Shown here: one piece after another, positions 37,700 to 63,526 of the stretch
How positions within the stretch are numbered: the first letter of the stretch is position 1
How the letters are laid out: every line of letters starts with the position of its first letter
Assembly: GCA_964057225.1 (NCBI GenBank)
Contig: OZ059900.1
Span: 9,796,001 to 9,860,000, forward strand
Source of the DNA: Auanema rhodensis
Taxonomy: Eukaryota; Animalia; Nematoda
Reading direction: 5' to 3'
DNA length: 64,000 nt
The notes under the pieces: generated by a model
What the model saw: the letters and a program-made list of their open reading frames with translations, nothing else
The model's database searches: none
Told to the model about the DNA's origin: nothing
Program-made: the position numbers and the translations under genes

Positions 37700-38069
37700 T
37701 TAGATTGAAAACATTCGTCTTCATGGGAAGATTTTGAAAATTTCTAATTTTTTTGTTAATTATATGATATAAACTATAACGAATTAAAGTGTTAGAGATG
37801 AAACAACGTAAAGATTGCTCTTCTTATACTTGGAATCTTAGTTTTTCATTATATTCTTCTTTGTAAAACCTTTGAACATCAAAACGAGATTGACAATACA
37901 TTGGAAGATGAAACAAGGATAATCTTAGAATATATATCTGAGTTCATATCACATAGTTAACTATGACATATAAATAACGTCAAATACTACAATTATCTAA
38001 AACTCTTCTGAACCTATAAAAGTAAAAAAACTTCAGAGTAGACGGTTTATCGATCGATTTTAGGTCGAC

Positions 38070-40400: not shown

Positions 40401-41051
40401 ATTCCAAATTACTTATTAAAACAAGATTGCAGAAATTTTATGAAGAATTCCTGAAAAATGTTTAATTAAATAATAAAAAATAAAAGTAATTAATTTATTA
40501 TTAAAAGGTGAAAAAAATTCAAATTTTGAATTAAGCTAATGAGAAATTTTGGCGCCTAGCAATAGAGCACACATTCAGATAACTGGTACTAATATTAAAG
40601 TTAGTCCTATATTAGCCATAGTCCATAATTATTTATACCAGTATAACTATTTTTATTTATCGTTCACATCGTTCTTTTATTTTTATTTTCGTTTTTTATT
40701 TGTTTTGAAACCTTTTCTATTAAGTCATTTTATTCAATTGATTATAAAATTGATAATATCTGGTACTAATAAAGATATTTGTCAACAGTGATTTATTTAA
40801 ACTCAATCACATTAAAATATCTATGAAAGCAATAAAAATCGTGTATGGTTTAAAAAATATTCATTTTTAAGATGAAATACAATCTTCAAATAATAAAAAT
40901 TTCAAACAATATGAAAATAATAGGATAAAATTTAAAATGCTTTCATATTATTAAATTTGATCAAAATAATAAAAAGTCTCATAAAACTATAAAATCTGAA
41001 CAAAGACAATGATAACATCACTGTTATAATATAGAATATTCTATAATTGTT

Positions 41052-43438: not shown

Positions 43439-43772
43439 TCTAGAATTTTCTAGAAAAACAAACAAAAAATGAAGTTAAAATGGTTAGAATACTAATTAGA
43501 TTAAGAAATCAGTAAGAATGATAGCTTATATGATTATACAAGATATGGATCCTACATCAATTGAGATTAAAAATAAAACAGTATAAACACAACACAAAGG
43601 GAATAAAAAAAATAATAAAAAGAGAAAATATAATTTAGGAAGACAATAACAACAGTTGTTTGAATGGGTTGTGATAAGTGATAATCCCGCGTAGTATTAG
43701 GGCAAATACGTATTTACTGATAACTGTTTATTTACCATATCTTTTTATTTCTTGGAAAGAGTTAATAAAAAA

Positions 43773-43891
43773 AGCTTACGGCACCCGGGATTCCCAAGCC
43801 GTCTCCGATCCAAGTACTAACCGGGCCCAACGTTGCTTGACTTGCCAGATCGGACGGGATGGCGTACTTTCAACGTGGTATGGTCGTAAGC
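43773..43891 (-). rRNA. 5S rRNA gene, copy 1
   Basis: 119 nt, GCTTACGACCATACCACGTTG…AGTACTTGGATCGGAGAC…GTAAGCT, closely resembling C. elegans 5S. It is followed by an oligo-T Pol III terminator. Confidence 0.97.
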
Positions 43892-43912
43892 GAAACTTTG
43901 AATCGCTTTGTC

Positions 43913-43971
43913 TGTCGCGGTTAGCGATTATTTTTTATCCTTTTTTCTATGTTTTGTTCCATTTCAGTTTT
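43913..43971 (+). repeat. Host element 5' LTR, first 59 bp (interrupted)
   Basis: Matches 61889-61947 and ends in the nested element's TSD GTTTT. Confidence 0.95.
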
Positions 43972-44273
43972 TGTCGCTTCGGCGAAGGTATTCGGTTGTC
44001 GGTATTCCGCTGAGAATTAATAGAACAGATAGTTAGTGGTAGAATGCTTTATTAAAGAGAAAGTTAACAATTCAACAAAATATAGATCGTCTATACTCCG
44101 TTGAGGTTTGGTTGAGGTATGTCTTGTATTTTCCGATCCCAAAGATGAAGATATGGGAAGGCGGGCCGAAAAGTACAATCTGAAATAGACAAAGTAAAGG
44201 AAAACGATAAAAACAAAACTGAAATGGAACAAAACATAGAAAAAAGAATAAAAAATAATCGCTAACCGCGACA
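43972..44273 (-). repeat. Nested element 3' LTR (302 bp)
   Basis: Appears identical to 52579-52880. Confidence 0.95.
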
Positions 44274-44381
44274 CTGCCGCCGCAGCTAAGCCATTGGCCT
44301 TTTGCGACGTTGTCCGTCGCATAATGACCCATGATGCTTATATAGTAAGATTTTTAAGGATAGTACGGAATTAGTTCAATG

Positions 44382-47300
44382 TTAAAATCTTCTATCAAAA
44401 CAAAGATTTCTAAGAATAAAGAAAAACTTGGTTGTTGTATCTATTATGATTTTAATAGTACGGAAAGCTGTGATCAAGAAAAAATAAATGGCTGGAGTAC
44501 AACCTAGGTATCCCAAAAAACATATGATGATCAGAAAAACAACGCAGATTGAAAACATCATCCAGTGTTCTTTAAAAAGTTTCAAAAAAGGAATTATGTC
44601 AGGTATTATAACTGAATTCTGATTTGAATGAATTTCATTTGGTTCATTAGTAGATGAATTAAAATATAATTGTCCCGTTACAATTATATCAATTTTTTCA
44701 TGATTACATTTAGTATGACAAACTTCATTTATAATTGAATTATCTCTTTTAATATTGATATTTGTAATTTCATTGAAGGGTGAACATTTAATCATGAATA
44801 CATCTTTTGAACACTCGATCGGTATCCATGTTTCTTTAGATGACATACAAGAAAACAATGCAGATGCACCCTGCCCACAGGAATAACATCCGGAGAGACT
44901 GATCAATAAGGGACGACAAGGTATATCATAGGAAAATGTATTACTGTCATATAAAAGTTCAGAATCAATTGAAACTGTAGTTTCATCATACTGAGTTCGA
45001 AAAGTTAAGGATGTATCGGGTTTATAGATTGTCTCCGTGTTTGCCATATACGGAGGTAAAATATGAGAAAAATGTGTGAAATTATGTTGTGGACATATAC
45101 AGCCAGCAACATCATTATTGATTTTGTTACAAGTACAATCGATAACCGTTGTACATCTTGAAAAATTGTCGGAAGTGTCTGCCTTCGAAATACATTGTAC
45201 CATAAATGGAAAATGTGGTTCAACAGCAAAGATTTGATTGTTTGAAGCAACAAAATAATAATTATGAAGTGGAGTAGGAGGTTTGTCTTGTGTATTGATC
45301 GTCATATTGAAAAAAGAGTAATTCATCTTCAAATATGGTGGAATTGTGATATTATAAATATTTTTATCTTTAACAATATGTGTTGTAATTTCAAAAGTTG
45401 AAGATGTTGTCCAATCTTCACATTTAAATACTTCAAATATGTCGTCCGAAGTAGGTACATGTTCTAATTTGTAGAAAAGACAAGGGTTTTCCCAAAATGT
45501 CAAACAACGCCATATATGTGCTGAGGACCGGACACATTTGGATTGTGTTGGATAATTATATGGTTCGAATTCAGAAATACGAGAGCGATGATTCATAGTT
45601 TCACAAGTTTGATCACAAGATCCCATATGAGCACATCGAAAATCAACAGTTAGTTTAGGCAAAGTAGCCTTTGTAAAAAATTTTGTGGTTTTCTTACATT
45701 CATAACTTGTATATAATTTTCGAATTTGAATATAGCCAATAGAATGATTTTTAAATTTTATATCCAGGCATAAATCTTTAACTCCAGGAGAAAAAACTAT
45801 TTGATCACTATATTGGTGATAACATTGAGTACGATTCAGACAATGTGTAGAAACCGAATGAATAACGTGATGATCGGTACAAGCAGTAGCATTATTAATC
45901 AGAAATATCGTTAGTATACTGATAATTGATAATCGAGAACCTCTTTTCCAAAATGGAGGATATAATTTAGGTTCTATATGTGGAATATTCTCAGATGAAG
46001 TTGGAGGAGGTTCAATAACTCCTAATTCAATATCATTCTGTTCCGGAGTATGAGGTCTAAGTGTGAAAAAAGAAGATATGTAACGAATAGTATTAGACCA
46101 GGAATTATATCGATATTGATGGAATCCTATGCGTATACAACAACAAAGGATGCCAAATAAACAACAAAGTGGTAAGAACAATGACCACATGGCAAGATGA
46201 GGAGCACAATGTGGGTTTCCAAGCAAATGTATGGATAAAAACTTTGCCTCATCACATACTACAGAATTTGCAGATGCTACGGGTAAAAATATCGATATTA
46301 TTGTAAAAATTAAAATTGCAGACGTCATTGCTGATTTGAAATTCTTTCGCGAAGCGTATGTGATGTGATCCCGTAAAGGTAAGGTGCGAACACGTTTTTC
46401 GTTTGTTTCAGTAGATGGTTTTACGTCGTTTTGGTCAATGGTAGGCAAAATTATGGTTTGTTTTGCTTTACTTATGTTTTTCTTTTGTAATTTTTTACGA
46501 TTATCGTCAGGCGTATGACCTGGACCCCATAATTGTAATTCAGCTTCTTCCTCAAGGATCGGATTATGTATCGAAGAAATTTTGGACGTAGGTATGTAAA
46601 TTTTTTGAGGATTATTAATATCTATTGGTTCAGGACATGTAACCACATTGTTCGTTTCATGGATTGAAGGTACAGGTGAGTTTGATCTTATAATATATTC
46701 CTGTATTGGTTGAGCATCAAGGTTCATCATATCCGAAGCAGATCCTACCTTCAAAGACAATGAAGTGTCTTCGGAAGGAGTAGATCGAGGAATTGATGTC
46801 ATATCAGGTAAAACACTTCGTAATTCAAGTGGATATAGATGATTTAAGGAACGAGATATGATGTTCCCAGCTGGAGTGAGAACTTTAGCTGTACGAATGA
46901 ATCCATCAGAACTACTTATAAGTTCTGTGATTCGACCAAGTTTCCATTGACCACGAGGTAAGTTATCGTTATGTATAACTACAATTTCACCAATATTAGG
47001 TTTATTGGCATTTGCTGAAGGTTGTTTTCGGGAATGTTTGTATATATCACGAATATATATCAAATATTCTGTTTGAAATTTATCCCAAAACATCGTAGCT
47101 GCATCAGAAGTAAGTTGTAAAGTTTTTAATGCTTGTTCAACGTTTTGTATTACAGGAATATCAATGGAATTATTATAAACTCGAGAACCACAATCATCCG
47201 GTAGGGAAAGAACAAGACCAGGCGAAATGAAATCGACAGGACGAATAGGTACGTGATTTATATTATTTGGATCTGGATGTGTTAAAGGCCTTGTGTTAAT

Positions 47301-50300
47301 GACTGCTTCAATTTTGACAATTAAAGTTAATAATTCATCAAATGTTAATTTATTTCTTTGTATTGCCTTTTTCATTGCATTTTTAGTAATTCCCACCATT
47401 CTTTCCCAAGAACCTCCTTTCCATGGAGACTTAGGTGTGTTAAAGAGCCAATTTATGTTATTTTTGGCTAGATGGACTACAATATCAGCTGGGGTGAAAT
47501 TAAATTCAGCTGATTTTTGTATTGTCTCAATTAATTGAGCTCCGAGAATAAAATTACCCCCACAATCACTTCGCATTGTGGTTGGTAAACCTCGTCGGGC
47601 TATGAAACGAGTGAAAGCGTTCATAAATGAAGTCGCTGTTTGATCATAGACCATTTCAAGATGAATGGCACGTATGGTTAAGCAAGTAAAAAGACATACA
47701 TAGACCTTATGTCCACTTTTAAGCATAATAGGTCCAAATAAGTCGCAACCAGTGTTAAGAAATGGTTTAGTTAATATCACTCTATCTTTAGGCAATGAAG
47801 GCATATCAGGAGTGCCATATGGTAAAGATTGATATTTATTGCATAAATGACATTTCTTCAAAGTTTGTTTTATAATTGCTGCAGCGCGAGCAATAAAATA
47901 AGTTTGACGAAGATGTGTGATCAAAAATTCTTTTCCTTGATGAAAAGATGCGCGATGAGCGTCCATAATTATGTGTTGAGTGAATAATGAGTTGCGAGGA
48001 AGATAAATTGGGTTTTTTGTATCATAGGATAGTAAAGAATTTTGTAATCGGCTTCTTACTCGAATTATCTCGTTATCATCATGATAGAAATGATAACCAG
48101 GATATTGTCGTCGTAAATCATTAATAATGAGATGATCTTGAGCTTGTCGAATTAAAATAGTACGTATTATCTTCAAATCAGTTGTTAAAACGGGATATGA
48201 TGTTGATATTTGTGAAATATTTCGTAATTTATGTCCATTTTGATTTTTAAATGTTTTTAAATGCCAAATTTTTATAATTTTAGCCAAACGGGCTAACAAA
48301 CGTAAAGTTGCAAAATGACCGTTATGATAAGCTAGGTTATGTTCCAAAGGTACAGATATAGCTTGAGCTATAAGTAATGATACAGGTGAAACATGCATCA
48401 CTTGCAAGGAACCATATGGTGTTAAAGCTTGAACGGTTCTGTTAAGAATCCACTGTGGTCCAAGAAGCCACATAGATTCCTGAAGTTGATATTTATTGGC
48501 TCCTCGTGAACCAATGTCAGCCGGATTATAATCCGTAGTAACATGGTAAAATTGAACATTAATCGAATGTTCTTCTAATACACGGGTCATATGTTGTACA
48601 TTTTGAACTTGTTTTGCTATGAAGTCAGGTAATTGCTTATTTGTTAAAATCCATGATAACGCAATGCTGCTATCACTTACAATATTTAGTTTTTTACATG
48701 GTAATTCCATTAATATTGTGTGAGAAAGTCTCATAGCTAATCGAATAGCTAAGAGTTCCATGCGTGGAATTGTGATTGGTGTTTTAGGAGATAAGCGGCT
48801 TTTACCTGCTAGAATAGAACTCATTTTGTTGTTTGTCTGTATGTAAGCACACACAGCTAACGCTGTTGAACTAGCGTCAGCAAAGACCCATAATGTACCT
48901 TCTTCAATAGATGGTGATAGTACACGAGGTACAGTAACCTTAGCATAATTAATCTCGTTAATTATTGATGTCCAAGAGGCTGATAATTCAGAAGGTATAG
49001 TATCATCCCATTCTGTTTTAAGTGCAAAAATATCTCTAAGAATAACCTTCAAGGGTAAAATTAATGGATTTGTTATACCCAAAGGATCATAAACTGAATG
49101 TAATTGTTGTAATGCGTTTCGTTTGGTTACTGTTGAGAGTTCCGGTATATTGAATCGAATTGAAAGGGAATCACTTAGAGCATTATAAGGTACTCCAAGA
49201 ATTTTTAGTGGACAATCAGAGAGAATATCATCTTTATGAAGGTGCTGAAGAGCTTCTGACTTATTTGATGCGAATTCACGAACATGCATCGAAATATTTT
49301 GAAATAATTGTTGTGTAAGTGAACATTTTTGTTGAGCTTCATCTATACTATCAGCAAATAATAGAATATTATCTACATATAATGTATTTAATATTTCATC
49401 TGATAAGTCAGTATTCAAAGAGCTTAAATACCAATTTACACTCATGTTTAGAATGCTAGGTGAGGCAGTCAATCCAAATGGTATGCGTTTGAATCGAAAA
49501 ACCTTAGTATTACTTGAGTTACAACTTCCTTGAGGATCCTTTACCCAAAAGAAACGGCAAAGATCCCGATGTTGCTTCTGTAAGCCTACTTGTAAAAAGG
49601 CTGATTGAATATCACAAGTAATAATGATTGGTTTTATTCTTGAAGCAATGAGAATGTTGAAAATATTGTTCACAAAACTTTTTCCAGTATATAGTATGTC
49701 GTTAAGGGATAATTTACCCTTAGTTTTAGCTGAAGCATCGAAAACAACTCGTAAAGGTTTATTCGGCTTGTTTGTATTCCATACCCCATGATGTGGAATA
49801 TAATGACATATAATATCAGAATTATGATTATGGTTGGAAGTTTCAAAAGGAACTTCTTCAATGATACCGTTATCGATATAATCATCAATAATTTTCCTGT
49901 ACATTTCCAATTTCGAAGGATTTGCTTGTAAAGTTTTGAACAATGCCAAAAATCGATAAAAGGCTAAACCTTTATTATCTGGTAATTGATGATAATTTGA
50001 TTTCAATGGTAAAGGAGCTTCAATACGATGATTGGTTAGTGTCAACTGTTTTGAATAATCTTCGTAATAATCAATAGTTGTGTCAATTCCAGCTTCAGAA
50101 GTATTAATTCCTAAGCTATCAATTTCAAATATGTATCGAAGCATATCATTATGTTGTAATGGTTTATCATTAATTGTTATTAACGTAACAGAATGATTTT
50201 GATATGGTATTTCCCCATACAAGGTATAACCGAAACTGGTATTCTGCATTCTTAATGTAGAGGGTAACTCAAGTTCAGAATTCATATGAACGAATAACTT

Positions 50301-52295
50301 ATAGCGATCTAATCCAATTAGAATATCTGGTTCAAATGCCTGACCATCAATCATTGGATTAGCTAAAGTTATATTGTTTCTTTTAATGAATGAACGATCA
50401 TTATTGTCTAAAAGTGGAGCTCTTAATGATGTAGCTATGAATGGTTTCGTAAGCATGTTGGTTATGATGATACTGCCATTAGAAGTATAAAAAATAGTTT
50501 TCACTTCTTTACATTCATGTGTTTCGCTGAGGCCACCTATTCCAAAGAATGTGCGATGTTGAACTTTGTTAATAGGCAATTGAAGATCCTTAGCTATATC
50601 ACTACGTATGAAAGACCGCATAGAGCCACTGTCAATCACTACCTTTACTGTGATATATTTATTTTGACTGTAACTGAATATATGTGTCATAGCTGTTTTC
50701 AATACAATTTGACTCATCTCGATATCATGGGTATCCTCGGTATGTGTGAGCAATTGTAATTGTGTATTCTTAGGTTCAGTAACTATTAATGTTACTGGTA
50801 GATGATTGAAAAATGCTGGTTGTACTGTAGGTACTGTTTGTGATACAGTTGGTGTAGAAATGATGTCATTTTTATTTTGTGAGACTGTAAGGTCTGGAGT
50901 TTGTTGTCCTGCACTTTCTGTTATGATCATGCTTGTGGACGATATAGGTTTTACAGGACTCTTTGTTTCACGATCTAAATTTAGACATAAGCAACTGTTA
51001 TGCTCATTTTTGCATTTCGGGCATTTCGGTCGAGAACAATCACGACTGCGATGTGAAGTAGAGAAACAAAGCCAGCATACTTCTTTGTTCTTTAAGATTT
51101 CACGTTTTTTCTGTGGTGTGTCATAAGTACGGCAATAATAAGATGGATGTCCTTCTTTACCACAAAAAACACAAGTCCAAATTTTTTTAGTGGATTTGTC
51201 GAAAGTTTTATCAACATGTTTTCCACGATTTGGTGAATTATGTGAGTCATGTTCTGAATTTCGTTTTCTAGTGTCCATTAAACTGAATTCATAAATTCGT
51301 GAAGAGAGATGTTGATAAATGTCATCCATTGATTGATCTAGAGGATCTGGTTGACGATATAGTTCACTCATTATATAATGAGGAAATTTTTCAGCGCAAA
51401 TAGCAAAGAAAAATTCAGGACCAATATGACTTCCAGCGGCTGTAATTTGACGATCATAGCTTTGGATCAAATCAAATAATTGCTTACAGCTTTTTGCATC
51501 AGAAGCAGGAGATAAATTTTTCATTTTCCTCAATAATTGAAGTTTATCTGTAGCATATCTCATATATGCATTTTCAAGTGCTTTTCTCAGTAAGAGATAG
51601 TTGTTTTCATTAGGTTCAATACCCCTTATAACGACCAAAGCTTTATCGGATAAGCCTTCGAGTAAAATGTTCACTTTATCAAGTATGGAATATTGTGGAT
51701 TTTGATGTATCATGTTATTAAATCTTGACCAATACAGTTTGAAATTTTCGGGTGTACCATCGAAAGTCGGTATTTGTGTTACCGGACGTTGAATATGATT
51801 GCTTGTTTGTAACAATTGTAATAAATTTGAATAAATTTGTGTTGTTTCGGTACCAGTGCTTTCGATTACTTTTTCTTTCTTTTTCTCGGGAAGTAGTGAT
51901 TCCACGAATGCAATTGCTGTTTTAATATGACTGATACGGTCAAGGAGTAATAATCTTTGTTCGTCAGCTATATTGTAAGCTTGACGATTGTTTGGATTTT
52001 CTTCAAGTTCTTCGTATAATGCTTTCATTTCGTTTCGAAGATCCTTATCAGAATCTTTGAAAACGGTTTGGTATTTTTCTATGTTTCTGTTCACTGTGTC
52101 GAGAGCAGTAGAGAGCTCGTTCAATACCAATTCATGATTGCGTAAAGTTGATTGCAGTAAAATAATTCTATCGTATGTTATTTCTGAATCAGATACCCCG
52201 GCGGGTTCGTTGTCGAGAAGATTTGCGTAACGTTTCAGCAAAACGGATAAGAAGTCGTATGAACGACGAATGTCGCCAACAAATGAGGAGGCCAT
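44382..52295 (-). CDS. Gag-Pol-Env polyprotein, 2637 aa (nested copy)
   Basis: It has the same domains as 53412-61325. I count about 11 amino-acid differences between the two translations. Confidence 0.96.
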   Translation of the reverse strand: MASSFVGDIRRSYDFLSVLLKRYANLLDNEPAGVSDSEITYDRIILLQSTLRNHELVLNELSTALDTVNRNIEKYQTVFKDSDKDLRNEMKALYEELEENPNNRQAYNIADEQRLLLLDRISHIKTAIAFVESLLPEKKKEKVIESTGTETTQIYSNLLQLLQTSNHIQRPVTQIPTFDGTPENFKLYWSRFNNMIHQNPQYSILDKVNILLEGLSDKALVVIRGIEPNENNYLLLRKALENAYMRYATDKLQLLRKMKNLSPASDAKSCKQLFDLIQSYDRQITAAGSHIGPEFFFAICAEKFPHYIMSELYRQPDPLDQSMDDIYQHLSSRIYEFSLMDTRKRNSEHDSHNSPNRGKHVDKTFDKSTKKIWTCVFCGKEGHPSYYCRTYDTPQKKREILKNKEVCWLCFSTSHRSRDCSRPKCPKCKNEHNSCLCLNLDRETKSPVKPISSTSMIITESAGQQTPDLTVSQNKNDIISTPTVSQTVPTVQPAFFNHLPVTLIVTEPKNTQLQLLTHTEDTHDIEMSQIVLKTAMTHIFSYSQNKYITVKVVIDSGSMRSFIRSDIAKDLQLPINKVQHRTFFGIGGLSETHECKEVKTIFYTSNGSIIITNMLTKPFIATSLRAPLLDNNDRSFIKRNNITLANPMIDGQAFEPDILIGLDRYKLFVHMNSELELPSTLRMQNTSFGYTLYGEIPYQNHSVTLITINDKPLQHNDMLRYIFEIDSLGINTSEAGIDTTIDYYEDYSKQLTLTNHRIEAPLPLKSNYHQLPDNKGLAFYRFLALFKTLQANPSKLEMYRKIIDDYIDNGIIEEVPFETSNHNHNSDIICHYIPHHGVWNTNKPNKPLRVVFDASAKTKGKLSLNDILYTGKSFVNNIFNILIASRIKPIIITCDIQSAFLQVGLQKQHRDLCRFFWVKDPQGSCNSSNTKVFRFKRIPFGLTASPSILNMSVNWYLSSLNTDLSDEILNTLYVDNILLFADSIDEAQQKCSLTQQLFQNISMHVREFASNKSEALQHLHKDDILSDCPLKILGVPYNALSDSLSIRFNIPELSTVTKRNALQQLHSVYDPLGITNPLILPLKVILRDIFALKTEWDDTIPSELSASWTSIINEINYAKVTVPRVLSPSIEEGTLWVFADASSTALAVCAYIQTNNKMSSILAGKSRLSPKTPITIPRMELLAIRLAMRLSHTILMELPCKKLNIVSDSSIALSWILTNKQLPDFIAKQVQNVQHMTRVLEEHSINVQFYHVTTDYNPADIGSRGANKYQLQESMWLLGPQWILNRTVQALTPYGSLQVMHVSPVSLLIAQAISVPLEHNLAYHNGHFATLRLLARLAKIIKIWHLKTFKNQNGHKLRNISQISTSYPVLTTDLKIIRTILIRQAQDHLIINDLRRQYPGYHFYHDDNEIIRVRSRLQNSLLSYDTKNPIYLPRNSLFTQHIIMDAHRASFHQGKEFLITHLRQTYFIARAAAIIKQTLKKCHLCNKYQSLPYGTPDMPSLPKDRVILTKPFLNTGCDLFGPIMLKSGHKVYVCLFTCLTIRAIHLEMVYDQTATSFMNAFTRFIARRGLPTTMRSDCGGNFILGAQLIETIQKSAEFNFTPADIVVHLAKNNINWLFNTPKSPWKGGSWERMVGITKNAMKKAIQRNKLTFDELLTLIVKIEAVINTRPLTHPDPNNINHVPIRPVDFISPGLVLSLPDDCGSRVYNNSIDIPVIQNVEQALKTLQLTSDAATMFWDKFQTEYLIYIRDIYKHSRKQPSANANKPNIGEIVVIHNDNLPRGQWKLGRITELISSSDGFIRTAKVLTPAGNIISRSLNHLYPLELRSVLPDMTSIPRSTPSEDTSLSLKVGSASDMMNLDAQPIQEYIIRSNSPVPSIHETNNVVTCPEPIDINNPQKIYIPTSKISSIHNPILEEEAELQLWGPGHTPDDNRKKLQKKNISKAKQTIILPTIDQNDVKPSTETNEKRVRTLPLRDHITYASRKNFKSAMTSAILIFTIISIFLPVASANSVVCDEAKFLSIHLLGNPHCAPHLAMWSLFLPLCCLFGILCCCIRIGFHQYRYNSWSNTIRYISSFFTLRPHTPEQNDIELGVIEPPPTSSENIPHIEPKLYPPFWKRGSRLSIISILTIFLINNATACTDHHVIHSVSTHCLNRTQCYHQYSDQIVFSPGVKDLCLDIKFKNHSIGYIQIRKLYTSYECKKTTKFFTKATLPKLTVDFRCAHMGSCDQTCETMNHRSRISEFEPYNYPTQSKCVRSSAHIWRCLTFWENPCLFYKLEHVPTSDDIFEVFKCEDWTTSSTFEITTHIVKDKNIYNITIPPYLKMNYSFFNMTINTQDKPPTPLHNYYFVASNNQIFAVEPHFPFMVQCISKADTSDNFSRCTTVIDCTCNKINNDVAGCICPQHNFTHFSHILPPYMANTETIYKPDTSLTFRTQYDETTVSIDSELLYDSNTFSYDIPCRPLLISLSGCYSCGQGASALFSCMSSKETWIPIECSKDVFMIKCSPFNEITNINIKRDNSIINEVCHTKCNHEKIDIIVTGQLYFNSSTNEPNEIHSNQNSVIIPDIIPFLKLFKEHWMMFSICVVFLIIICFLGYLGCTPAIYFFLITAFRTIKIIIDTTTKFFFILRNLCFDRRF

Positions 52296-52564
52296 TTCTA
52301 ACGCTGTGTGAGGCGTAATAGGTAAGCTTCTATAGCTGATAATGATGAATAAAATTCAGAAAATGAGAGAGAACAAGAAATGAAAGTTGTACAAAGTACA
52401 ACAAATGAGTATGAGATATACGACTTGTCGTATCTTGGAGCGTTATTATGCTCCGAAATTATATCGATTACTGCAGGCAAATTCACGCCTGAGCTGATGG
52501 ACTTAAGAGTCGCCACCAAATTAAATGATAAAGTACCTGTTGAAGCAGTGACCTGAGTCGTGAT

Positions 52565-52577
52565 GGTCGATGCACCA
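52565..52577 (-). promoter_or_regulatory. Primer-binding site (tRNA-Gly GCC), nested copy
   Basis: TGGTGCATCGACC lies 1 nt inside the 5' LTR and is complementary to the nematode tRNA-Gly(GCC) 3' end …GGTCGATGCACCA. Confidence 0.88.
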
Positions 52578-52578
52578 A

Positions 52579-52880
52579 TGTCGCTTCGGCGAAGGTATTC
52601 GGTTGTCGGTATTCCGCTGAGAATTAATAGAACAGATAGTTAGTGGTAGAATGCTTTATTAAAGAGAAAGTTAACAATTCAACAAAATATAGATCGTCTA
52701 TACTCCGTTGAGGTTTGGTTGAGGTATGTCTTGTATTTTCCGATCCCAAAGATGAAGATATGGGAAGGCGGGCCGAAAAGTACAATCTGAAATAGACAAA
52801 GTAAAGGAAAACGATAAAAACAAAACTGAAATGGAACAAAACATAGAAAAAAGAATAAAAAATAATCGCTAACCGCGACA
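52579..52880 (-). repeat. Nested element 5' LTR (302 bp)
   Basis: TGTCGC…GCGACA termini; adjacent to the PBS. Confidence 0.95.
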
Positions 52881-52885
52881 GTTTT

Positions 52886-53128
52886 GTTTTTATCGTTTTC
52901 CTTTACTTTGTCTATTTCAGATTGTACTTTTCGGCCCGCCTTCCCATATCTTCATCTTTGGGATCGGAAAATACAAGATATACCTCAACCAAACCTCAAC
53001 GGAGTATAGACGATCTATATTTTGTTGAATTGTTAACTTTCTCTTTAATAAAGCATTCTACCACTGACTATCTGTTCTATTAATTCTCAGCGGAATACCG
53101 ACAACCGAATACCTTCGCCGAAGCGACA
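52886..53128 (+). repeat. Host element 5' LTR, remaining 243 bp
   Basis: Matches 61948-62190, and 59+243=302 bp. Confidence 0.95.
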
Positions 53129-53129
53129 T

Positions 53130-53142
53130 TGGTGCATCGACC
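53130..53142 (+). promoter_or_regulatory. Primer-binding site (tRNA-Gly GCC), host copy
   Basis: TGGTGCATCGACC lies 1 nt after the LTR end. Confidence 0.88.
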
Positions 53143-53411
53143 ATCACGACTCAGGTCACTGCTTCAACAGGTACTTTATCATTTAATTTGGTGGCGACTC
53201 TTAAGTCCATCAGCTCAGGCGTGAATTTGCCTGCAGTAATCGATATAATTTCGGAGCATAATAACGCTCCAAGATACGACAAGTCGTATATCTCATACTC
53301 ATTTGTTGTACTTTGTACAACTTTCATTTCTTGTTCTCTCTCATTTTCTGAATTTTATTCATCATTATCAGCTATAGAAGCTTACCTATTACGCCTCACA
53401 CAGCGTTAGAA

Positions 53412-56400
53412 ATGGCCTCCTCATTTGTTGGCGACATTCGTCGTTCATACGACTTCTTATCCGTTTTGCTCAAACGTTACGCAAATCTTCTCGACAACGA
53501 ACCCGCCGGGGTATCTGATTCAGAAATAACATACGATAGAATTATTTTACTGCAATCAACTTTACGCAATCATGAATTGGTATTGAACGAGCTCTCTACT
53601 GCTCTCGACACAGTGAACAGAAACATAGAAAAATACCAAACCGTTTTCAAAGATTCTGATAAGGAACTTCGAAACGAAATGAAAGCATTATACGAAGAAC
53701 TTGAAGAAAATCCAAACAATCGTCAAGCTTACAATATAGCTGACGAACAAAGATTATTACTCCTTGACCGTATCAGTCATATTAAAACAGCAATTGCATT
53801 CGTGGAATCACTACTTCCCGAGAAAAAGAAAGAAAAAGTAATCGAAAGCACTGGTACCGAAACAACACAAATTTATTCAAATTTATTACAATTGTTACAA
53901 ACAAGCAATCATATTCAACGTCCGGTAACACAAATACCGACTTTTGATGGTACACCCGAAAATTTCAAACTGTATTGGTCAAGATTTAATAACATGATAC
54001 ATCAAAATCCACAATATTCCATACTTGATAAAGTGAACATTTTACTCGAAGGCTTATCCGATAAAGCTTTGGTCGTTATAAGGGGTATTGAACCTAATGA
54101 AAACAACTATCTCTTACTGAGAAAAGCACTTGAAAATGCATATATGAGATATGCTACAGATAAACTTCAATTATTGAGGAAAATGAAAAATTTATCTCCT
54201 GCTTCGGATGCAAAAAGCTGTAAGCAATTATTTGATTTGATCCAAAGCTATGATCGTCAAATTACAGCCGCTGGAAGTCATATTGGTCCTGAATTTTTCT
54301 TTGCTATTTGCGCTGAAAAATTTCCTCATTATATAATGAGTGAACTATATCGTCAACCAGATCCTCTAGATCAATCAATGGATGACATTTATCAACATCT
54401 CTCTTCACGAATTTATGAATTCAGTTTAATGGACACTAGAAAACGAAATTCAGAACATGACTCACATAATTCACCAAATCGTGGAAAACATGTTGATAAA
54501 ACTTTCGACAAATCCACTAAAAAAATTTGGACTTGTGTTTTTTGTGGTAAAGAAGGACATCCATCTTATTATTGCCGTACTTATGACACACCACAGAAAA
54601 AACGTGAAATCTTAAAGAACAAAGAAGTATGCTGGCTTTGTTTCTCTACTTCACATCGCAGTCGTGATTGTTCTCGACCGAAATGCCCGAAATGCAAAAA
54701 TGAGCATAACAGTTGCTTATGTCTAAATTTAGATCGTGAAACAAAGAGTCCTGTAAAACCTATATCGTCCACAAGCATGATCATAACAGAAAGTGCAGGA
54801 CAACAAACTCCAGACCTTACAGTCTCACAAAATAAAAATGACATCATTTCTACACCAACTGTATCACAAACAGTACCTACAGTACAACCAGCATTTTTCA
54901 ATCATCTACCAGTAACATTAATAGTTACTGAACCTAAGAATACACAATTACAATTGCTCACACAGACCGAGGATACCCATGATATCGAGATGAGTCAAAT
55001 TGTATTGAAAACAGCTATGACACATATATTCAGTTACACACAAAATAAATATATCACAGTAAAGGTAGTGATTGACAGTGGCTCTATGCGGTCTTTCATA
55101 CGTAGTGATATAGCTACGGATCTTCAATTGCCTATTAACAAAGTTCAACACCGCACATTCTTTGGAATAGGTGGCCTCAGCGAAACACATGAATGTAAAG
55201 AAGTGAAAACTATTTTTTATACTTCTAATGGCAGTATCATCATAACCAACATGCTTACGAAACCATTCATAGCTACATCATTAAGAGCTCCACTTTTAGA
55301 CAATAATGATCGTTCATTCATTAAAAGAAACAATATAACTTTAGCTAATCCAATGATTGATGGTCAGGCATTTGAACCAGATATTCTAATTGGATTAGAT
55401 CGCTATAAGTTATTCGTTCATATGAATTCTGAACTTGAGTTACCCTCTACATTAAGAATGCAGAATACCAGTTTCGGTTATACCTTGTATGGGGAAATAC
55501 CATATCAAAATCATTCTGTTACGTTAATAACAATTAATGATAAACCATTACAACATAATGATATGCTTCGATACATATTTGAAATTGATAGCTTAGGAAT
55601 TAATACTTCTGAAGCTGGAATTGACACAACTATTGATTATTACGAAGATTATTCAAAACAGTTGACACTAACCAATCATCGTATTGAAGCTCCTTTACCA
55701 TTGAAATCAAATTATCATCAATTACCAGATAATAAAGGTTTAGCCTTTTATCGATTTTTGGCATTGTTCAAAACTTTACAAGCAAATCCTTCGAAATTGG
55801 AAATGTACAGGAAAATTATTGATGATTATATCGATAACGGTATCATTGAAGAAGTTCCTTTTGAAACTTCCAACAATAATCATAATTCTGATATTATATG
55901 TCATTATATTCCACATCATGGGGTATGGAATACAAACAAGCCGAATAAACCTTTACGAGTTGTTTTCGATGCTTCAGCTAAAACTAAGGGTAAATTATCC
56001 CTTAACGACATACTATATACTGGAAAAAGTTTTGTGAACAATATTTTCAACATTCTCATTGCTTCAAGAATAAAACCAATCATTATTACTTGTGATATTC
56101 AATCAGCCTTTTTACAAGTAGGCTTACAGAAGCAACATCGGGATCTTTGCCGTTTCTTTTGGGTAAAGGATCCTCAAGGAAGTTGTAACTCAAGTAATAC
56201 TAAGGTTTTTCGATTCAAACGCATACCATTTGGATTGACTGCCTCACCTAGCATTCTAAACATGAGTGTAAATTGGTATTTAAGCTCTTTGAATACTGAC
56301 TTATCAGATGAAATATTAAATACATTATATGTAGATAATATTCTATTATTTGCTGATAGTATAGATGAAGCTCAACAGAAATGTTCACTTACACAACAAT

Positions 56401-59400
56401 TATTTCAAAATATTTCGATGCATGTTCGTGAATTCGCATCGAATAAGTCAGAAGCTCTTCAGCACCTTCATAAAGATGATATTCTCTCTGATTGTCCACT
56501 AAAAATTCTTGGAGTACCTTATAATGCTCTAAGTGATTCCCTTTCAATTCGATTCAATATACCGGAACTCTCTACAGTAACCAAACGAAACGCATTACAA
56601 CAATTACATTCAGTTTATGATCCTTTGGGCATAACAAATCCATTAATTTTACCCTTGAAGGTTATTCTTAGAGATATTTTTGCACTTAAAACAGAATGGG
56701 ATGATACTATACCTTCTGAATTATCAGCCTCTTGGACATCAATAATTAACGAAATTAATTATGCTAAGGTTACTGTACCTCGTGTACTATCACCATCTAT
56801 TGAAGAAGGTACATTATGGGTCTTTGCTGACGCTAGTTCAACAGCGTTAGCTGTGTGTGCTTACATACAGACAAACAACAAAATGAGTTCTATTCTAGCA
56901 GGTAAAAGCCGCTTATCTCCTAAAACACCAATTACAATTCCACGCATGGAACTCTTAGCTATTCGATTAGCTATGAGACTTTCTCACACAATATTAATGG
57001 AATTACCATGTAAAAAACTAAATATTGTAAGTGATAGCAGCATTGCGTTATCATGGATTTTAACAAATAAGCAATTACCTGACTTCATAGCAAAACAAGT
57101 TCAAAATGTACAACATATGACCCGTGTATTAGAAGAACATTCGATTAATGTTCAATTTTACCATGTTACTACGGATTATAATCCGGCTGACATTGGTTCA
57201 CGAGGAGCCAATAAATATCAACTTCAGGAATCTATGTGGCTTCTTGGACCACAGTGGATTCTTAACAGAACCGTTCAAGCTTTAACACCATATGGTTCCT
57301 TGCAAGTGATGCATGTTTCACCTGTATCATTACTTATAGCTCAAGCTATATCTGTACCCTTGGAACATAACCTAGCTTATCATAACGGTCATTTTGCAAC
57401 TTTACGTTTGTTAGCCCGTTTGGCTAAAATTATAAAAATTTGGCATTTAAAAACATTTAAAAATCAAACTGGACATAAATTACGGAATATTTCACAAATA
57501 TCAACATCATATCCCGTTTTAACAACTGATTTGAAGATAATACGTACTATTTTAATTCGACAAGCTCAAGATCATCTCATTATTAATGATTTACGACGAC
57601 AATATCCTGGTTATCATTTCTATCATGATGATAACGAGATAATTCGAGTAAGAAGCCGATTACAAAATTCTTTACTATCCTATGATACAAAAAACCCAAT
57701 TTATCTTCCTCGCAACTCATTATTCACTCAACACATAATTATGGACGCTCATCGCGCATCTTTTCATCAAGGAAAAGAATTTTTGATCACACATCTTCGT
57801 CAAACTTATTTTATTGCTCGCGCTGCAGCAATTATAAAACAAACTTTGAAGAAATGTCATTTATGCAATAAATATCAATCTTTACCATATGGCACTCCTG
57901 ATATGCCTTCATTGCCTAAAGATAGAGTGATATTAACTAAACCATTTCTTAACACTGGTTGCGACTTATTTGGACCTATTATGCTTAAAAGTGGACATAA
58001 GGTCTATGTATGTCTTTTTACTTGCTTAACCATACGTGCCATTCATCTTGAAATGGTCTATGATCAAACAGCGACTTCATTTATGAACGCTTTCACTCGT
58101 TTCATAGCCCGACGAGGTTTACCAACCACAATGCGAAGTGATTGTGGGGGTAATTTTATTCTCGGAGCTCAATTAATTGAGACAATACAAAAATCAGCTG
58201 AATTTAATTTCACCCCAGCTGATATTGTAGTCCATCTAGCCAAAAATAACATAAATTGGCTCTTTAACACACCTAAGTCTCCATGGAAAGGAGGTTCTTG
58301 GGAAAGAATGGTGGGAATTACTAAAAATGCAATGAAAAAGGCAATACAAAGAAATAAATTAACATTTGATGAATTATTAACTTTAATTGTCAAAATTGAA
58401 GCAGTCATTAACACAAGGCCTTTAACACATCCAGATCCAAATAATATAAATCACGTACCTATTCGTCCTGTCGATTTCATTTCGCCTGGTCTTGTTCTTT
58501 CCCTACCGGATGATTGTGGTTCTCGAGTTTATAATAATTCCATTGATATTCCTGTAATACAAAACGTTGAACAAGCATTAGAAACTTTACAACTTACTTC
58601 TGATGCAGCTACGATGTTTTGGGATAAATTTCAAACAGAATATTTGATATATATTCGTGATATATACAAACATTCCCGAAAACAACCTTCAGCAAATGCC
58701 AATAAACCTAATATTGGTGAAATTGTAGTTATACATAACGATAACTTACCTCGTGGTCAATGGAAACTTGGTCGAATCACAGAACTTATAAGTAGTTCTG
58801 ATGGATTCATTCGTACAGCTAAAGTTCTCACTCCAGCTGGGAACATCATATCTCGTTCCTTAAATCATCTATATCCACTTGAATTACGAAGTGTTTTACC
58901 TGATATGACATCAATTCCTCGATCTACTCCTTCCGAAGACACTTCATTGTCTTTGAAGGTAGGATCTGCTTCGGATATGATGAACCTTGATGCTCAACCA
59001 ATACAGGAATATATTATAAGATCAAACTCACCTGTACCTTCAATCCATGAAACGAACAATGTGGTTACATGTCCTGAACCAATAGATATTAATAATCCTC
59101 AAAAAATTTACATACCTACGTCCAAAATTTCTTCGATACATAATCCGATCCTTGAGGAAGAAGCTGAATTACAATTATGGGGTCCAGGTCATACGCCTGA
59201 CGATAATCGTAAAAAATTACAAAAGAAAAACACAAGTAAAGCAAAACAAACCATAATTTTGCCTACCATTGACCAAAACGACGTAAAACCATCTACTGAA
59301 ACAAACGAAAAACGTGTTCGCACCTTACCTTTACGGGATCACATCACATACGCTTCGCGAAAGAATTTCAAATCAGCAATGACGTCTGCAATTTTAATTT

Positions 59401-61325: not shown

Positions 61326-61405
61326 CATTGAACTAATTCCGTACTATCCTTAAAAATCTTACTATATAAGCATTGTTATTCTCATTTTTGAAATTATTTG
61401 TTGTC

Positions 61406-61876
61406 ATGGATTCTGATTCTATTACAGTTCATAATGAACCATCTTTTGAGGAAGAATTGAAAGATCCTTCCTATTCTAACCTTCCTACCTCTATTCGAAC
61501 TCTTGTTCTCGTTGAAAATCGTTTAAATCGAAAGTTCCAATACATGAGTGAGTATTTGGACAATCACTTCAGAATCATTTCTGAAGCTATGAAAATTCTG
61601 AATGAAAATCAGAATTTGATTCGATTACAAACGCAACCAACGAAAACTTGCCTATTTTGCGATCAAGTGACTACTGATGGTCACCGCACAGGCAATTGTC
61701 CCATCTATTCATCTGTTATGGAGCGTGGAATCCGCGCTCATCAACTGAAATTATGCTTACGATGCTTATCGGCTCTACACGAGCATCCCTGTAGCACTAA
61801 CTGCTACAAATGCAACTCTGATAAGCATCATGGGTCATTATGCGACGGACAACGTCGCAAAAGGCCAATGGCTTAG
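61406..61876 (+). CDS. Retroelement 3' accessory ORF, 156 aa: coiled-coil plus three zinc knuckles plus basic tail
   Basis: ATG at 61406; motifs CLFC..H..C, CLRC..H..C and CYKC..HH..C; ends QRRKRPMA*. It lies between the env stop and the 3' LTR. Confidence 0.85.
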   Translation: MDSDSITVHNEPSFEEELKDPSYSNLPTSIRTLVLVENRLNRKFQYMSEYLDNHFRIISEAMKILNENQNLIRLQTQPTKTCLFCDQVTTDGHRTGNCPIYSSVMERGIRAHQLKLCLRCLSALHEHPCSTNCYKCNSDKHHGSLCDGQRRKRPMA

Positions 61877-61888
61877 CTGCGGCGGCAG

Positions 61889-62190
61889 TGTCGCGGTTAG
61901 CGATTATTTTTTATCCTTTTTTCTATGTTTTGTTCCATTTCAGTTTTGTTTTTATCGTTTTCCTTTACTTTGTCTATTTCAGATTGTACTTTTCGGCCCG
62001 CCTTCCCATATCTTCATCTTTGGGATCGGAAAATACAAGATATACCTCAACCAAACCTCAACGGAGTATAGACGATCTATATTTTGTTGAATTGTTAACT
62101 TTCTCTTTAATAAAGCATTCTACCACTGACTATCTGTTCTATTAATTCTCAGCGGAATACCGACAACCGAATACCTTCGCCGAAGCGACA
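61889..62190 (+). repeat. Host element 3' LTR (302 bp)
   Basis: TGTCGC…GCGACA termini, AATAAA at 62109-62114, followed by the TSD TTGTC. Confidence 0.96.
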
Positions 62191-62422
62191 TTGTCCCTTA
62201 TATTCCAGTGATGTTCGGGTGGGTTTCTACTAGTCTTGTAGTGCTTTTATAATGAAACGGAAATATACCAAATGTTAAAGAATAAAAACTTGTATATATA
62301 TATATATATATATAAATATATATAAGTAGGAATTGTTAGATATAAATGTTTATTATAATAAAAAAACAATAGTTAAAATTCAACAAACAAATTTCAAGTA
62401 GATGCCGGTCATTTGTTAAGTT

Positions 62423-62782: not shown

Positions 62783-62996
62783 CTCTTTAACTGGAAATAG
62801 GTACTTAACTTTAAAAACAACAGCAATTCCAATAAAATGATCAAAAACATTAAAAAAACATATAAAATTGTTATACAGAAGAATAATTAAATCGATATAG
62901 TGTTTGAAATTCTCGCAATATCTAATTATCCCGCGTATCATTAGAGCACCGATAACTATTATCTCATAGGTTTTTCATTTCTTCAAAGGATAAAAA

Positions 62997-63115
62997 AGCT
63001 TACGGCACCCGGGATTCCCAAGCCGTCTCCGATCCAAGTACTAACCGGGCCCAACGTTGCTTGACTTGCCAGATCAGACGGGATGGCGTACTTTCAACGT
63101 GGTATGGTCGTAAGC
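62997..63115 (-). rRNA. 5S rRNA gene, copy 2
   Basis: 119 nt, differing from copy 1 at one position that I can see (63076). It has an oligo-T terminator. Confidence 0.97.
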
Positions 63116-63526
63116 GGAGTTAACGTTTAGTTTTGTGCTTATGATAGTGAACTTCACTGACCGTGGTGTCAGAAAGCGTTCCATTTTGTTACATATATGT
63201 CTCAAAGGAAGGCAGCTGACCATGTCAGCTGCTATTATAAAACTAAAGCGGATAGTTTTGAAGACATTGTGAGAACTTTCTAGATAAACTTTTTATAAGT
63301 ATTGTAACATTTTGTGTAAACTGAGTAGGAGTTGTATGGATATATAAGCCTGAGTCTTCAAGACTAAGGCATCTCATTCTCGTCTGTTTCTTATCTTTTC
63401 TATAGCCTAAATTTTTGTGTAGTGATATTATAATACGAACAATAAAATTTATATATTTTATAGCTTGTTTCTTATTTCACCATACATTACACACTTATAT
63501 TTAAAATCATACTCATCTTCTCATAG

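What the first reader, a model, noticed from the sequence alone, without database searches (positions are those of the whole stretch)
43773..43971. Enveloped BEL/Pao retroelement inserted in the 5S rRNA Pol III promoter, a candidate Pol III-targeting belpaovirus
Seen: the host element's TSD (TTGTC) occupies -17..-21 relative to the 5S start at 43891. Rejoining the empty site puts TATAAG (62197-62202, minus strand) at -28..-23. The uninterrupted 5S copy has CATAAG (63138-63143) at exactly the same position. Integration therefore fell between the TATA-like element and the start site. A second, independent copy then landed at -76..-80 of the same gene. Established: yeast Ty3 and Ty1 and Dictyostelium DGLT-A/TRE elements target Pol III genes through the Pol III machinery. 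I know of no such targeting for BEL/Pao elements. Inference: this family's integrase is tethered to Pol III promoters. Two events at one locus are suggestive but not proof.
Basis: partly seen in the sequence, partly recalled or inferred. Interest (0 to 1): 0.9.

Follow-up and report, generated by a model that had tools for sequence, protein, structure and literature searches.

The report
Nested retrovirus-like elements upstream of 5S gene
Two young, intact copies of an enveloped retrovirus-like element, probably in a nematode genome, sit one inside the other within 80 bases upstream of a single 5S rRNA gene, which hints at, but does not prove, a preference for genes read by RNA polymerase III.

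Summary
Two full-length 5S rRNA genes lie on the minus strand (43773-43891 and 62997-63115). A 9.4-kb BEL/Pao element (43913-62190, + strand, TSD TTGTC) is inserted at -17..-21 of the first gene. It separates an ATAAG-containing TATA-like hexamer (-28..-23) from the start site, and the second 5S copy has the same block at the same place. A second copy (43972-52880, - strand, TSD GTTTT) later entered the first copy's 5' LTR, now at -76..-80. Each copy has identical 302-bp LTRs and an unbroken 2637-aa Gag-Pol-Env reading frame. The copies differ at 30 bases and by one 455-bp deletion, so they are independent and this is not an assembly artefact. The element is a new, distant relative of the hookworm 'Atlas virus' group. 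The claim that its integrase is tethered to Pol III remains unproven: there are two events at one locus, at two different distances, and the neighbouring 5S copy is unoccupied. The second site is also the LTR's best match to a 5S upstream element, so a sequence or TATA-bend preference is a live rival. I found no report of Pol III targeting by BEL/Pao elements or by any animal LTR element. A genome-wide tally of insertions would decide the question, but fetching further copies was barred here.

The parts
43773..43891 (-). 5S rRNA gene, copy 1 (start at 43891)
   Evidence: Rfam RF00001, 107.5 bits, model 1-120. A T run follows the 3' end.
43908..43912 (.). Left target-site duplication of the outer element (TTGTC), at -17..-21 of 5S copy 1
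   Evidence: Identical pentamer at 62191-62195.
43913..62190 (+). Outer BEL/Pao (Atlas-like) element, 9364 bp of its own sequence, interrupted by the inner element
   Evidence: LTR termini TGTCGC...GCGACA, TSD, and a PBS-like TGG just after the 5' LTR.
43913..43971 (+). Outer 5' LTR, first 59 bp
   Evidence: 0 differences from the first 59 bp of the outer 3' LTR.
43967..43971 (.). Left target-site duplication of the inner element (GTTTT), at -76..-80 of 5S copy 1
   Evidence: Same pentamer at 52881-52885. It occurs once in the intact LTR, at 61943-61947.
43972..52880 (-). Inner element, 8909 bp, nested in the outer 5' LTR in opposite orientation
43972..44273 (-). Inner 3' LTR (302 bp)
   Evidence: 0/302 differences from the inner 5' LTR.
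44274..44381 (-). Inner element: stretch between the polyprotein stop and the 3' LTR. ORF2 is broken here by one deletion (455 bp shorter than in the outer copy).
   Evidence: blastn of the internal regions.
44382..52295 (-). Inner Gag-Pol-Env polyprotein ORF, 2637 aa, unbroken
   Evidence: 2626/2637 residues identical to the outer copy.
52579..52880 (-). Inner 5' LTR (302 bp)
52881..53128 (+). Outer 5' LTR, remainder (LTR positions 55-302). Its first 5 bp are the right-hand TSD copy of the inner element.
   Evidence: 0/248 differences from the outer 3' LTR.
53130..53147 (+). Primer-binding-site-like stretch beginning TGG, 1 nt after the 5' LTR
   Evidence: Read from the sequence. The primer tRNA was not identified.
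53412..61325 (+). Outer Gag-Pol-Env polyprotein ORF, 2637 aa, unbroken
   Evidence: Pfam hits: DUF1759, RVT_1, Peptidase_A17, Integrase_H2C2, DUF5641, Phlebovirus_G2.
53943..54287 (+). Gag capsid-like domain (DUF1759, aa 178-292). Three zinc knuckles follow at about aa 374-437.
   Evidence: Knuckles read from the alignment.
56064..57038 (+). Reverse transcriptase (RVT_1, aa 885-1016) and Pao-type Peptidase_A17 domain (aa 1057-1209)
   Evidence: 2.8e-12 and 1.5e-36.
57726..58877 (+). Integrase: zinc-binding domain (aa 1439-1489) through the BEL/Pao C-terminal domain DUF5641 (aa 1727-1822)
   Evidence: The best relatives are 45-48% identical, from strongylid nematodes.
59826..60722 (+). Envelope: phlebovirus Gc-like class II fusion domain (aa 2139-2437)
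   Evidence: Pfam PF07245, 8e-43. PDB 7a4a (Atlas virus Gc), 1.9e-19.
61406..61876 (+). ORF2, 156 aa counted from its ATG, with three zinc-knuckle-like motifs. Present only in the outer copy.
   Evidence: weak likeness to the element's own Gag NC, E 2e-4. No Pfam hit and no homologue.
61889..62190 (+). Outer 3' LTR (302 bp, uninterrupted)
   Evidence: 3/302 differences from the inner LTRs.
62191..62195 (.). Right target-site duplication of the outer element (TTGTC)
62197..62202 (-). TATA-like hexamer TATAAG, at -28..-23 of 5S copy 1 before the insertion. It now lies 18.3 kb from the gene.
62997..63115 (-). 5S rRNA gene, copy 2, uninterrupted upstream region
   Evidence: Rfam, 106.1 bits.
63138..63143 (-). 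CATAAG at -28..-23 of 5S copy 2

Best explanation
Shown: an Atlas-like belpaovirus (a BEL/Pao LTR retroelement with one Gag-Pol-Env reading frame and a phlebovirus-type fusion glycoprotein) integrated twice, independently and recently, into the 80 bp upstream of one 5S rRNA gene. The first event cut at -17/-21, directly 3' of the gene's TATA-like box. The second event cut 59 bp further upstream, inside the first copy's LTR, in the opposite orientation. Inferred: this family has an integration bias for the promoter-proximal upstream region of Pol III-transcribed genes. The likely route is that the integrase-cDNA complex captures target DNA that is held open or bent by the Pol III initiation machinery (TFIIIB/TBP on a TATA-like box, or Pol III itself). 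Under that reading, nested pile-ups at one gene arise as they do for Ty1/Ty3 in yeast and DGLT-A/TRE in Dictyostelium. The window is probably loose (tens of bp) rather than a Ty3-like single-site ruler.
For: Both integrations are genuine: each has 5-bp TSDs, TG...CA termini and identical LTR pairs. They are independent: the copies differ at 27 of 8245 internal positions and 3 of 302 LTR positions, plus one 455-bp deletion. Both lie within 80 bp upstream of a high-scoring 5S gene. The first lies exactly between the shared ATAAG block and the start site. The host part of the window holds no other LTR or element fragment, so this is not a general dump of this family. The two insertions have opposite orientations, as seen for DGLT-A. 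The distance of the first site is in the range of DGLT-A and close to those of Tj1 and Ty3p, and Ty1 shows a broad upstream window. Rough arithmetic with assumed figures (100 young copies in a 100-Mb genome) gives about 0.01 expected pairs within 100 bp under uniform integration. That figure is my inference, not a measurement.
Against: There are only two events at one locus, and the window was picked because it looked striking. The two distances differ (-17/-21 against -76/-80), so no single ruler is seen. The first site lies within the stretch that TFIIIB is expected to cover, whereas Ty3 cuts at its edge. The second 5S gene, 941 bp away in the empty state, has no insertion and no LTR remnant. 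The second target is the element's own LTR and also resembles a 5S upstream motif, and either fact could explain it without Pol III. The copy number of the family, the number of Pol III genes and the identity of the host are all unknown. No paper I found reports such targeting for BEL/Pao elements.
Confidence: 0.4

Rival explanations
1. Local DNA sequence or shape preference. The integrase favours sites just 3' of a TATA-like A/T block followed by ACAAA(A)C, or DNA bent there by TBP or by its own flexibility. The 5S promoter was hit because it carries such a site, and the LTR carries one by chance. No link to Pol III as such.
For: In the sense of the 5S gene, site 1 reads TATAAG-G-[GACAA] and site 2 reads GATAAAAAC-[AAAAC]. 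The unoccupied copy 2 has CATAAG-C-ACAAAAC. The best match of the copy-2 upstream probe (-32..-12) anywhere in the 302-bp LTR, on either strand, is 14/21. That match covers the inner element's TSD, with the register 2 nt off. Matches of 14/21 or better occur at only 26 of 87,504 host positions.
Against: The probe was chosen after I had seen the sites. A probe from site 1 itself does not pick out site 2 (best 10/16, elsewhere). The loose motif ATAAR-N5-AA occurs 98 times in the window, as often as in shuffled sequence, and none of the other sites is occupied. With thousands of such sites in a genome, two hits 59 bp apart would still be odd.
Confidence: 0.2
2. Only one event relates to the 5S gene. 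The second copy entered the first because it was a copy of itself. Either the element's LTR is a favoured target (for example open chromatin at an active provirus), or one DNA copy integrated into another before the composite entered the chromosome. The 5S location of the first event would then be chance.
For: The second target lies in LTR sequence, not host sequence. The outermost 59 bp of the split LTR are intact, so a composite would still have had normal ends.
Against: Integration of one DNA copy into another is not a known route for BEL/Pao elements. A single chance hit exactly between the TATA-like box and the start of a 119-bp gene is itself improbable. Nesting into LTRs upstream of Pol III genes is what known Pol III-targeting elements do.
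Confidence: 0.2
3. No targeting at all. Integration is near random, and copies persist where they do little harm. One 5S gene of a multigene family is such a place, and an existing element is another. This locus came to notice because of selection and because the scan looks at many windows.
For: TE insertions in 5S spacers are described as relatively frequent in plants and fish (review PMC10946416). The window around the locus is gene-poor and A/T-rich.
Against: Both copies have identical LTRs and unbroken reading frames, so there has been little time for selection to sort insertions. The host part of the window holds no other copy. The chance of two young copies within 59 bp is very small for any plausible copy number (my arithmetic, with assumed figures).
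Confidence: 0.15
4. Assembly artefact: a fold-back (palindromic) chimera made by the sequencing or assembly process.
For: The two copies form an 8.5-kb inverted repeat with only 50 nt between the arms.
Against: The arms differ at 27 internal and 3 LTR positions and by a 455-bp deletion. The junctions are exact LTR ends flanked by a 5-bp duplication of LTR sequence. An artefact would not produce these features.
Confidence: 0.03

Closest known systems
Atlas virus and the Atlas clade of nematode belpaoviruses (Ancylostoma ceylanicum; PMC9094657 and preprint 10.64898/2026.03.22.711591)
   Same: About 9 kb long with identical LTRs. A single Gag-Pol-Env polyprotein without stops. Gag has three zinc knuckles. 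BEL/Pao Pol domains. A phlebovirus Gc-like class II fusion protein: the best PDB hit of the env part is 7a4a.
   Different: Only 38-48% identity to the nearest database proteins in RT-IN. 2637 aa against 2828 aa, and 302-bp against 271-bp LTRs. An extra 3' ORF2. Those papers do not mention integration sites, 5S or tRNA.
Ty3 (S. cerevisiae) and Tj1 (S. japonicus), Ty3/gypsy elements
   Same: LTR elements that integrate just upstream of Pol III start sites. Tj1 also integrates at the 5S gene.
   Different: A different family (Metaviridae), in fungi. Sharp positions of 1-4 bp (Ty3) or 1-10 bp (Tj1) from the start site, at the edge of TFIIIB. Here the sites are -17/-21 and -76/-80. The Ty3 integrase-TFIIIB contact is proven, and nothing of that kind is known here.
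DGLT-A (Dictyostelium discoideum)
   Same: An LTR element with one Gag-Pol reading frame. It inserts 13-33 bp upstream of tRNA genes in either orientation. This is the closest match in distance and in lack of orientation bias.
   Different: Ty3/gypsy clade, in an amoeba, with no envelope gene, and known from many insertions.
Ty1 (S. cerevisiae)
   Same: A broad upstream window at Pol III genes including 5S, with repeated and nested insertions at one gene.
   Different: Ty1/copia. The window is about 1 kb. Its integrase binds Pol III subunits.
Cer7 (C. elegans) and Tas (Ascaris), BEL/Pao elements with phlebovirus-like env
   Same: The same combination of a BEL/Pao core with a G2-like env in nematodes. 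This is from my own knowledge and from the discussion in PMC9094657.
   Different: Not compared here, because fetching them was barred. I know of no reported Pol III association.

Membership tests
BEL/Pao LTR retroelements (Belpaoviridae) | LTRs with TG...CA ends, a 4-6 bp target duplication, and a PBS next to the 5' LTR | tested here: met
   302-bp LTRs TGTCGC...GCGACA, 5-bp TSDs for both copies, and TGG 1 nt after the LTR.
BEL/Pao LTR retroelements (Belpaoviridae) | Pol with RT, the Pao-type Peptidase_A17 domain, and an integrase with DUF5641 at its C-terminus; Gag with DUF1759 | tested here: met
   Pfam E-values: PF05380 1.5e-36, PF00078 2.8e-12, PF18701 1.6e-14, PF03564 4.4e-09, PF17921 2.3e-05.
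Atlas-like clade (nematode belpaoviruses with class II env) | Single Gag-Pol-Env reading frame with a phlebovirus Gc-like fusion domain | tested here: met
   One 2637-aa ORF. PF07245 8e-43. PDB 7a4a 1.9e-19, with phlebovirus and bandavirus Gc chains below it.
Atlas-like clade (nematode belpaoviruses with class II env) | Three CCHC zinc knuckles in NC | tested here: met
   Three Cys/His knuckle motifs at about aa 374-437, read from the alignment.
Atlas-like clade (nematode belpaoviruses with class II env) | Capsid core more than 50% identical to Atlas CA (the criterion of the 2026 preprint) | not tested
   RT-IN identity of 38-48% to hookworm proteins makes more than 50% in CA unlikely.
Atlas-like clade (nematode belpaoviruses with class II env) | Nematode host | tested here: inconclusive
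   The nearest proteins come from strongylid nematodes. Host ORFs have no homologues and host look-ups found nothing.
Pol III-targeting LTR retrotransposons (Ty1, Ty3, Tj1, DGLT-A type) | Most insertions genome-wide lie upstream of Pol III genes | not testable with these tools
   This needs other copies of the element. The family is absent from the protein database above 48% identity, and fetching copies was barred.
Pol III-targeting LTR retrotransposons (Ty1, Ty3, Tj1, DGLT-A type) | A characteristic distance from the start site | tested here: inconclusive
   Two sites, at -17/-21 and -76/-80. Two events are too few, and they do not agree.
Pol III-targeting LTR retrotransposons (Ty1, Ty3, Tj1, DGLT-A type) | Repeated or nested insertions at the same Pol III gene | tested here: met
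   Two independent copies upstream of 5S copy 1. The neighbouring 5S copy 2 is empty.
Pol III-targeting LTR retrotransposons (Ty1, Ty3, Tj1, DGLT-A type) | Integrase or Gag binds TFIIIB or Pol III subunits | not testable with these tools
   No sequence signature for such binding is known. ORF2 and the integrase C-terminus carry no informative domain.

The most novel reading that the evidence does not exclude
An enveloped, apparently intact belpaovirus of an animal (probably a nematode) has evolved integration directed at the TFIIIB/TBP-bound upstream region of Pol III genes. This would be the first such case for BEL/Pao elements and for any metazoan LTR retroelement. It would be convergent with Ty3, Tj1, Ty1 and DGLT-A in compact fungal and amoebal genomes.
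Probability: 0.35. Interest if true: 0.8.

Novelty: new variant of a known kind. Interest (0 to 1): 0.55.

Why it matters
Targeting of Pol III genes is the textbook 'safe haven' strategy of retroelements in compact genomes. [quoted passage not shown] A BEL/Pao element doing the same in an animal would show a further independent origin of that strategy. It would extend the strategy to the third major LTR lineage and to a virus-like element that still carries an envelope gene. It would also give a natural case for comparing how different integrases read the same transcription machinery. If the genome-wide tally is negative, the locus is still a clean example of a very recent nested insertion by a new Atlas-like family that split a 5S gene from its TATA-like box.

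Tried and rejected
1. Assembly palindrome: rejected. The copies differ at 30 positions and by one deletion, and the junctions have exact TSDs.
2. Host identification: look-ups of three host ORFs, with flanks kept short so that no element DNA would be fetched, found nothing. Pfam on seven ORFs gave nothing above threshold. A full HMMER search of a 201-aa host ORF against 1.84 billion representatives gave 0 hits. The host remains 'probably a nematode', judged from the element's relatives only.
3. ORF2: no Pfam hit and no homologue. The only signal is a weak likeness to the element's own nucleocapsid knuckles.
4. A generic TATA-like motif as target: ATAAR-N5-AA is as common as in shuffled sequence (98 against 96 expected), so it cannot alone explain the sites.
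5. The idea that each 5S gene was duplicated together with a paralogous downstream gene: not supported. Only the 5S gene and about 50 nt of its 3' flank are shared.
6. Rfam 'miRNA' matches at 52733-52974 are below their gathering scores and simply reflect the hairpin formed by the head-to-head LTRs.
7. No tRNA, U6 or SL RNA gene is present in the window, so no second class of Pol III target could be examined.
8. Literature: four searches and three reviews gave no report of BEL/Pao or animal LTR elements targeting Pol III genes. That is absence from this library only.

Full report
WHAT IS THERE. Rfam finds two complete 5S rRNA genes on the minus strand, at 43773-43891 (107.5 bits) and 62997-63115 (106.1 bits; gathering score 38). 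They differ at one base, and each is followed by a T run. The window holds no tRNA gene or other known small-RNA gene. Between the two genes lie 18.3 kb made of two copies of one LTR retroelement, one nested in the other.

THE TWO ELEMENTS. The outer copy runs from 43913 to 62190 on the + strand. It is flanked by TTGTC at 43908-43912 and 62191-62195. Its 5' LTR is split after 59 bp by the inner copy (43972-52880, - strand), which is flanked by GTTTT at 43967-43971 and 52881-52885. In the uninterrupted 3' LTR that pentamer occurs once, at the matching place (61943-61947), so the inner copy came second.

I compared the LTR pieces apart and never joined them. The LTR is 302 bp. The two inner LTRs are identical (0/302). 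The two pieces of the outer 5' LTR are identical to its 3' LTR (0/59 and 0/248). Outer and inner LTRs differ at 3 positions. The internal regions differ at 27 of 8245 aligned bases with no small indels. The inner copy is 455 bp shorter near its 3' end.

State of the genes: the polyprotein gene is unbroken in both copies, with 0 stops and 0 frameshifts in 2637 aa, and 2626/2637 residues are identical. The small 3' ORF2 is whole in the outer copy and broken in the inner copy by one deletion.

These differences, the exact LTR ends and the target duplications rule out a fold-back assembly artefact.

WHAT KIND OF ELEMENT. Pfam places the polyprotein in BEL/Pao: DUF1759 (Gag), RVT_1, Peptidase_A17, Integrase_H2C2 and DUF5641. 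It also carries a C-terminal Phlebovirus_G2 fusion domain (8e-43). Against solved structures, the env part hits best 7a4a (1.9e-19), followed by Gc chains of phleboviruses and bandaviruses. I recalled from memory that 7a4a is the Gc of the hookworm 'Atlas virus'. The depositor's molecule name is uninformative, and the paper passages I read confirm a cryo-EM structure of Atlas Gc but not the entry code.

Atlas virus is a 9204-nt element with identical 271-nt LTRs and one 2828-aa Gag-Pol-Env frame (PMC9094657). A 2026 preprint defines an Atlas clade in nematodes with three NC zinc knuckles, and three such knuckles are present here. The nearest database proteins are from Ancylostoma, Necator and Oesophagostomum. 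Identity is only 38-40% over RT-IN and 45-48% over the integrase. This is therefore a new and rather distant member of that kind, and the host is probably, but not demonstrably, a nematode.

ORF2 (61406-61876, 156 aa) has three knuckle-like motifs and a weak likeness to the element's own NC (E 2e-4). It has no Pfam family and no homologue. Since the inner copy lacks it, either it is not needed in cis or it is not a gene.

THE TARGET SITES. Counting upstream from the 5S start at 43891, the outer TSD is at -17..-21. Reading the far host flank on from 62196, TATAAG falls at -28..-23. The second 5S gene has CATAAG at -28..-23 (63138-63143). The two upstream regions are otherwise unrelated: 21/60 identical, with ATAAG at -27..-23 as the only block. 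Alone, that block is about a 1-in-10 coincidence. Its position matches the TATA-like boxes known at about -31/-24 of Pol III genes with internal promoters (PMC7279448 and PMC10137851, listed). From my own knowledge, 5S genes of nematodes, insects, fungi and plants also carry such boxes.

The insertion replaced that box by the G+C-rich LTR end. The nearest A/T-rich run in the LTR now lies at about -36..-47. I infer that copy 1 may be weakened. The inner insertion is at -76..-80 in present coordinates, within LTR sequence.

IS IT MORE THAN CHANCE? The integrations themselves are certain. Their clustering is striking. The host part of the window holds no other trace of the family, yet two very young copies lie 59 bp apart next to a 119-bp Pol III gene. 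With assumed figures (100 young copies, 100 Mb) uniform integration predicts about 0.01 such pairs per genome. That figure is my illustration, not a measurement, and the window was selected for looking odd.

Known Pol III-targeting elements show exactly such nested pile-ups, and their distances bracket the first site. Ty3 integrates 1-4 bp, Tj1 1-10 bp, Ty3p about 6 bp and DGLT-A 13-33 bp (either orientation) upstream, TRE5 integrates 37-54 bp upstream, and Ty1 uses a window of about 1 kb.

Several points argue against a simple tether. The two distances disagree. The first site lies inside the region TFIIIB should occupy rather than at its edge. The second 5S gene is empty.

A SECOND LEAD. In the sense of the 5S gene, both cuts lie just 3' of a TATA-like block: TATAAG-G-[GACAA] at site 1 and GATAAAAAC-[AAAAC] at site 2. 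The empty copy 2 reads CATAAG-C-ACAAAAC. I slid the copy-2 upstream probe (-32..-12) along both strands of the LTR. The best match (14/21) covers the inner TSD, 2 nt out of register. Matches that good occur at 26 of 87,504 host positions. The probe was chosen after the fact, a site-1 probe does not find site 2, and a loose version of the motif is common and unoccupied elsewhere. The result keeps open a preference for a sequence or a TBP-type bend that is independent of Pol III. It equally fits TFIIIB settling on a substitute box in the LTR after the first insertion.

VERDICT. I put about 0.4 on a real bias for the upstream region of Pol III genes and 0.2 on a sequence or shape preference. I put 0.2 on the second event being due to the element's own LTR or a composite, 0.15 on chance plus tolerance, and 0.03 on an artefact. 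No paper in the library reports Pol III targeting by BEL/Pao or by any animal LTR element.

STEPS LEFT OUT. I did not fetch other copies or relatives of the element from public collections, whether by look-up of its protein, by LTR pattern or by related-locus scan. I did not scan collections for 5S loci in order to read virus-host junctions. I did not fetch the Atlas, Cer7 or Tas sequences. The three host-ORF look-ups used flanks short enough to take in at most about 65 bp of an LTR, and they returned nothing. The nested insertion was never cut out: the LTR pieces were compared apart and the uninterrupted 3' LTR served as the reference.

Noticed in passing
window 44334-61373: The head-to-head nesting makes an 8.5-kb near-perfect inverted repeat with only 50 nt between the arms. 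Read-through transcription would give a long hairpin RNA, a possible source of small RNAs against the family. The junction draws spurious below-threshold Rfam miRNA matches at 52733-52974.
   Followed up: partly
window 61406-61876: A 156-aa ORF2 between env and the 3' LTR of the outer copy. It has three zinc-knuckle-like motifs, a weak likeness to the element's own nucleocapsid, and no homologue in any search. It is missing from the otherwise intact inner copy.
   Followed up: yes
window 36039-37711 and 38058-39730: An inverted repeat with 1.67-kb arms, 97% alike, 346 nt apart. It holds only short ORFs and I saw no recognisable transposon ends. Its nature is unknown.
   Followed up: partly
window 43716-43892 and 62948-63116: The two 5S genes are not part of a uniform tandem array. 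Only the gene and about 50 nt of 3' flank are shared (89% over 178 nt). They would be 941 bp apart without the insertions, and an ORF of unknown function (62492-62782, minus strand) lies between them.
   Followed up: partly
window 43913-43941: After the insertion, the -22..-35 region of 5S copy 1 is the G+C-rich LTR end, and the nearest A/T-rich run sits at about -36..-47. The single-base difference between the two 5S genes would allow their transcripts to be told apart in RNA reads.
   Followed up: no
window 39802-42877 (minus strand): Three ORFs (257, 132 and 201 aa) that look like exons of a coiled-coil protein have no Pfam family and no homologue among 1.84 billion representative proteins. 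The host appears to be poorly represented in public protein data.
   Followed up: partly
window 62293-62324: A (TA)16 microsatellite about 100 bp beyond the outer element's right end.
   Followed up: no
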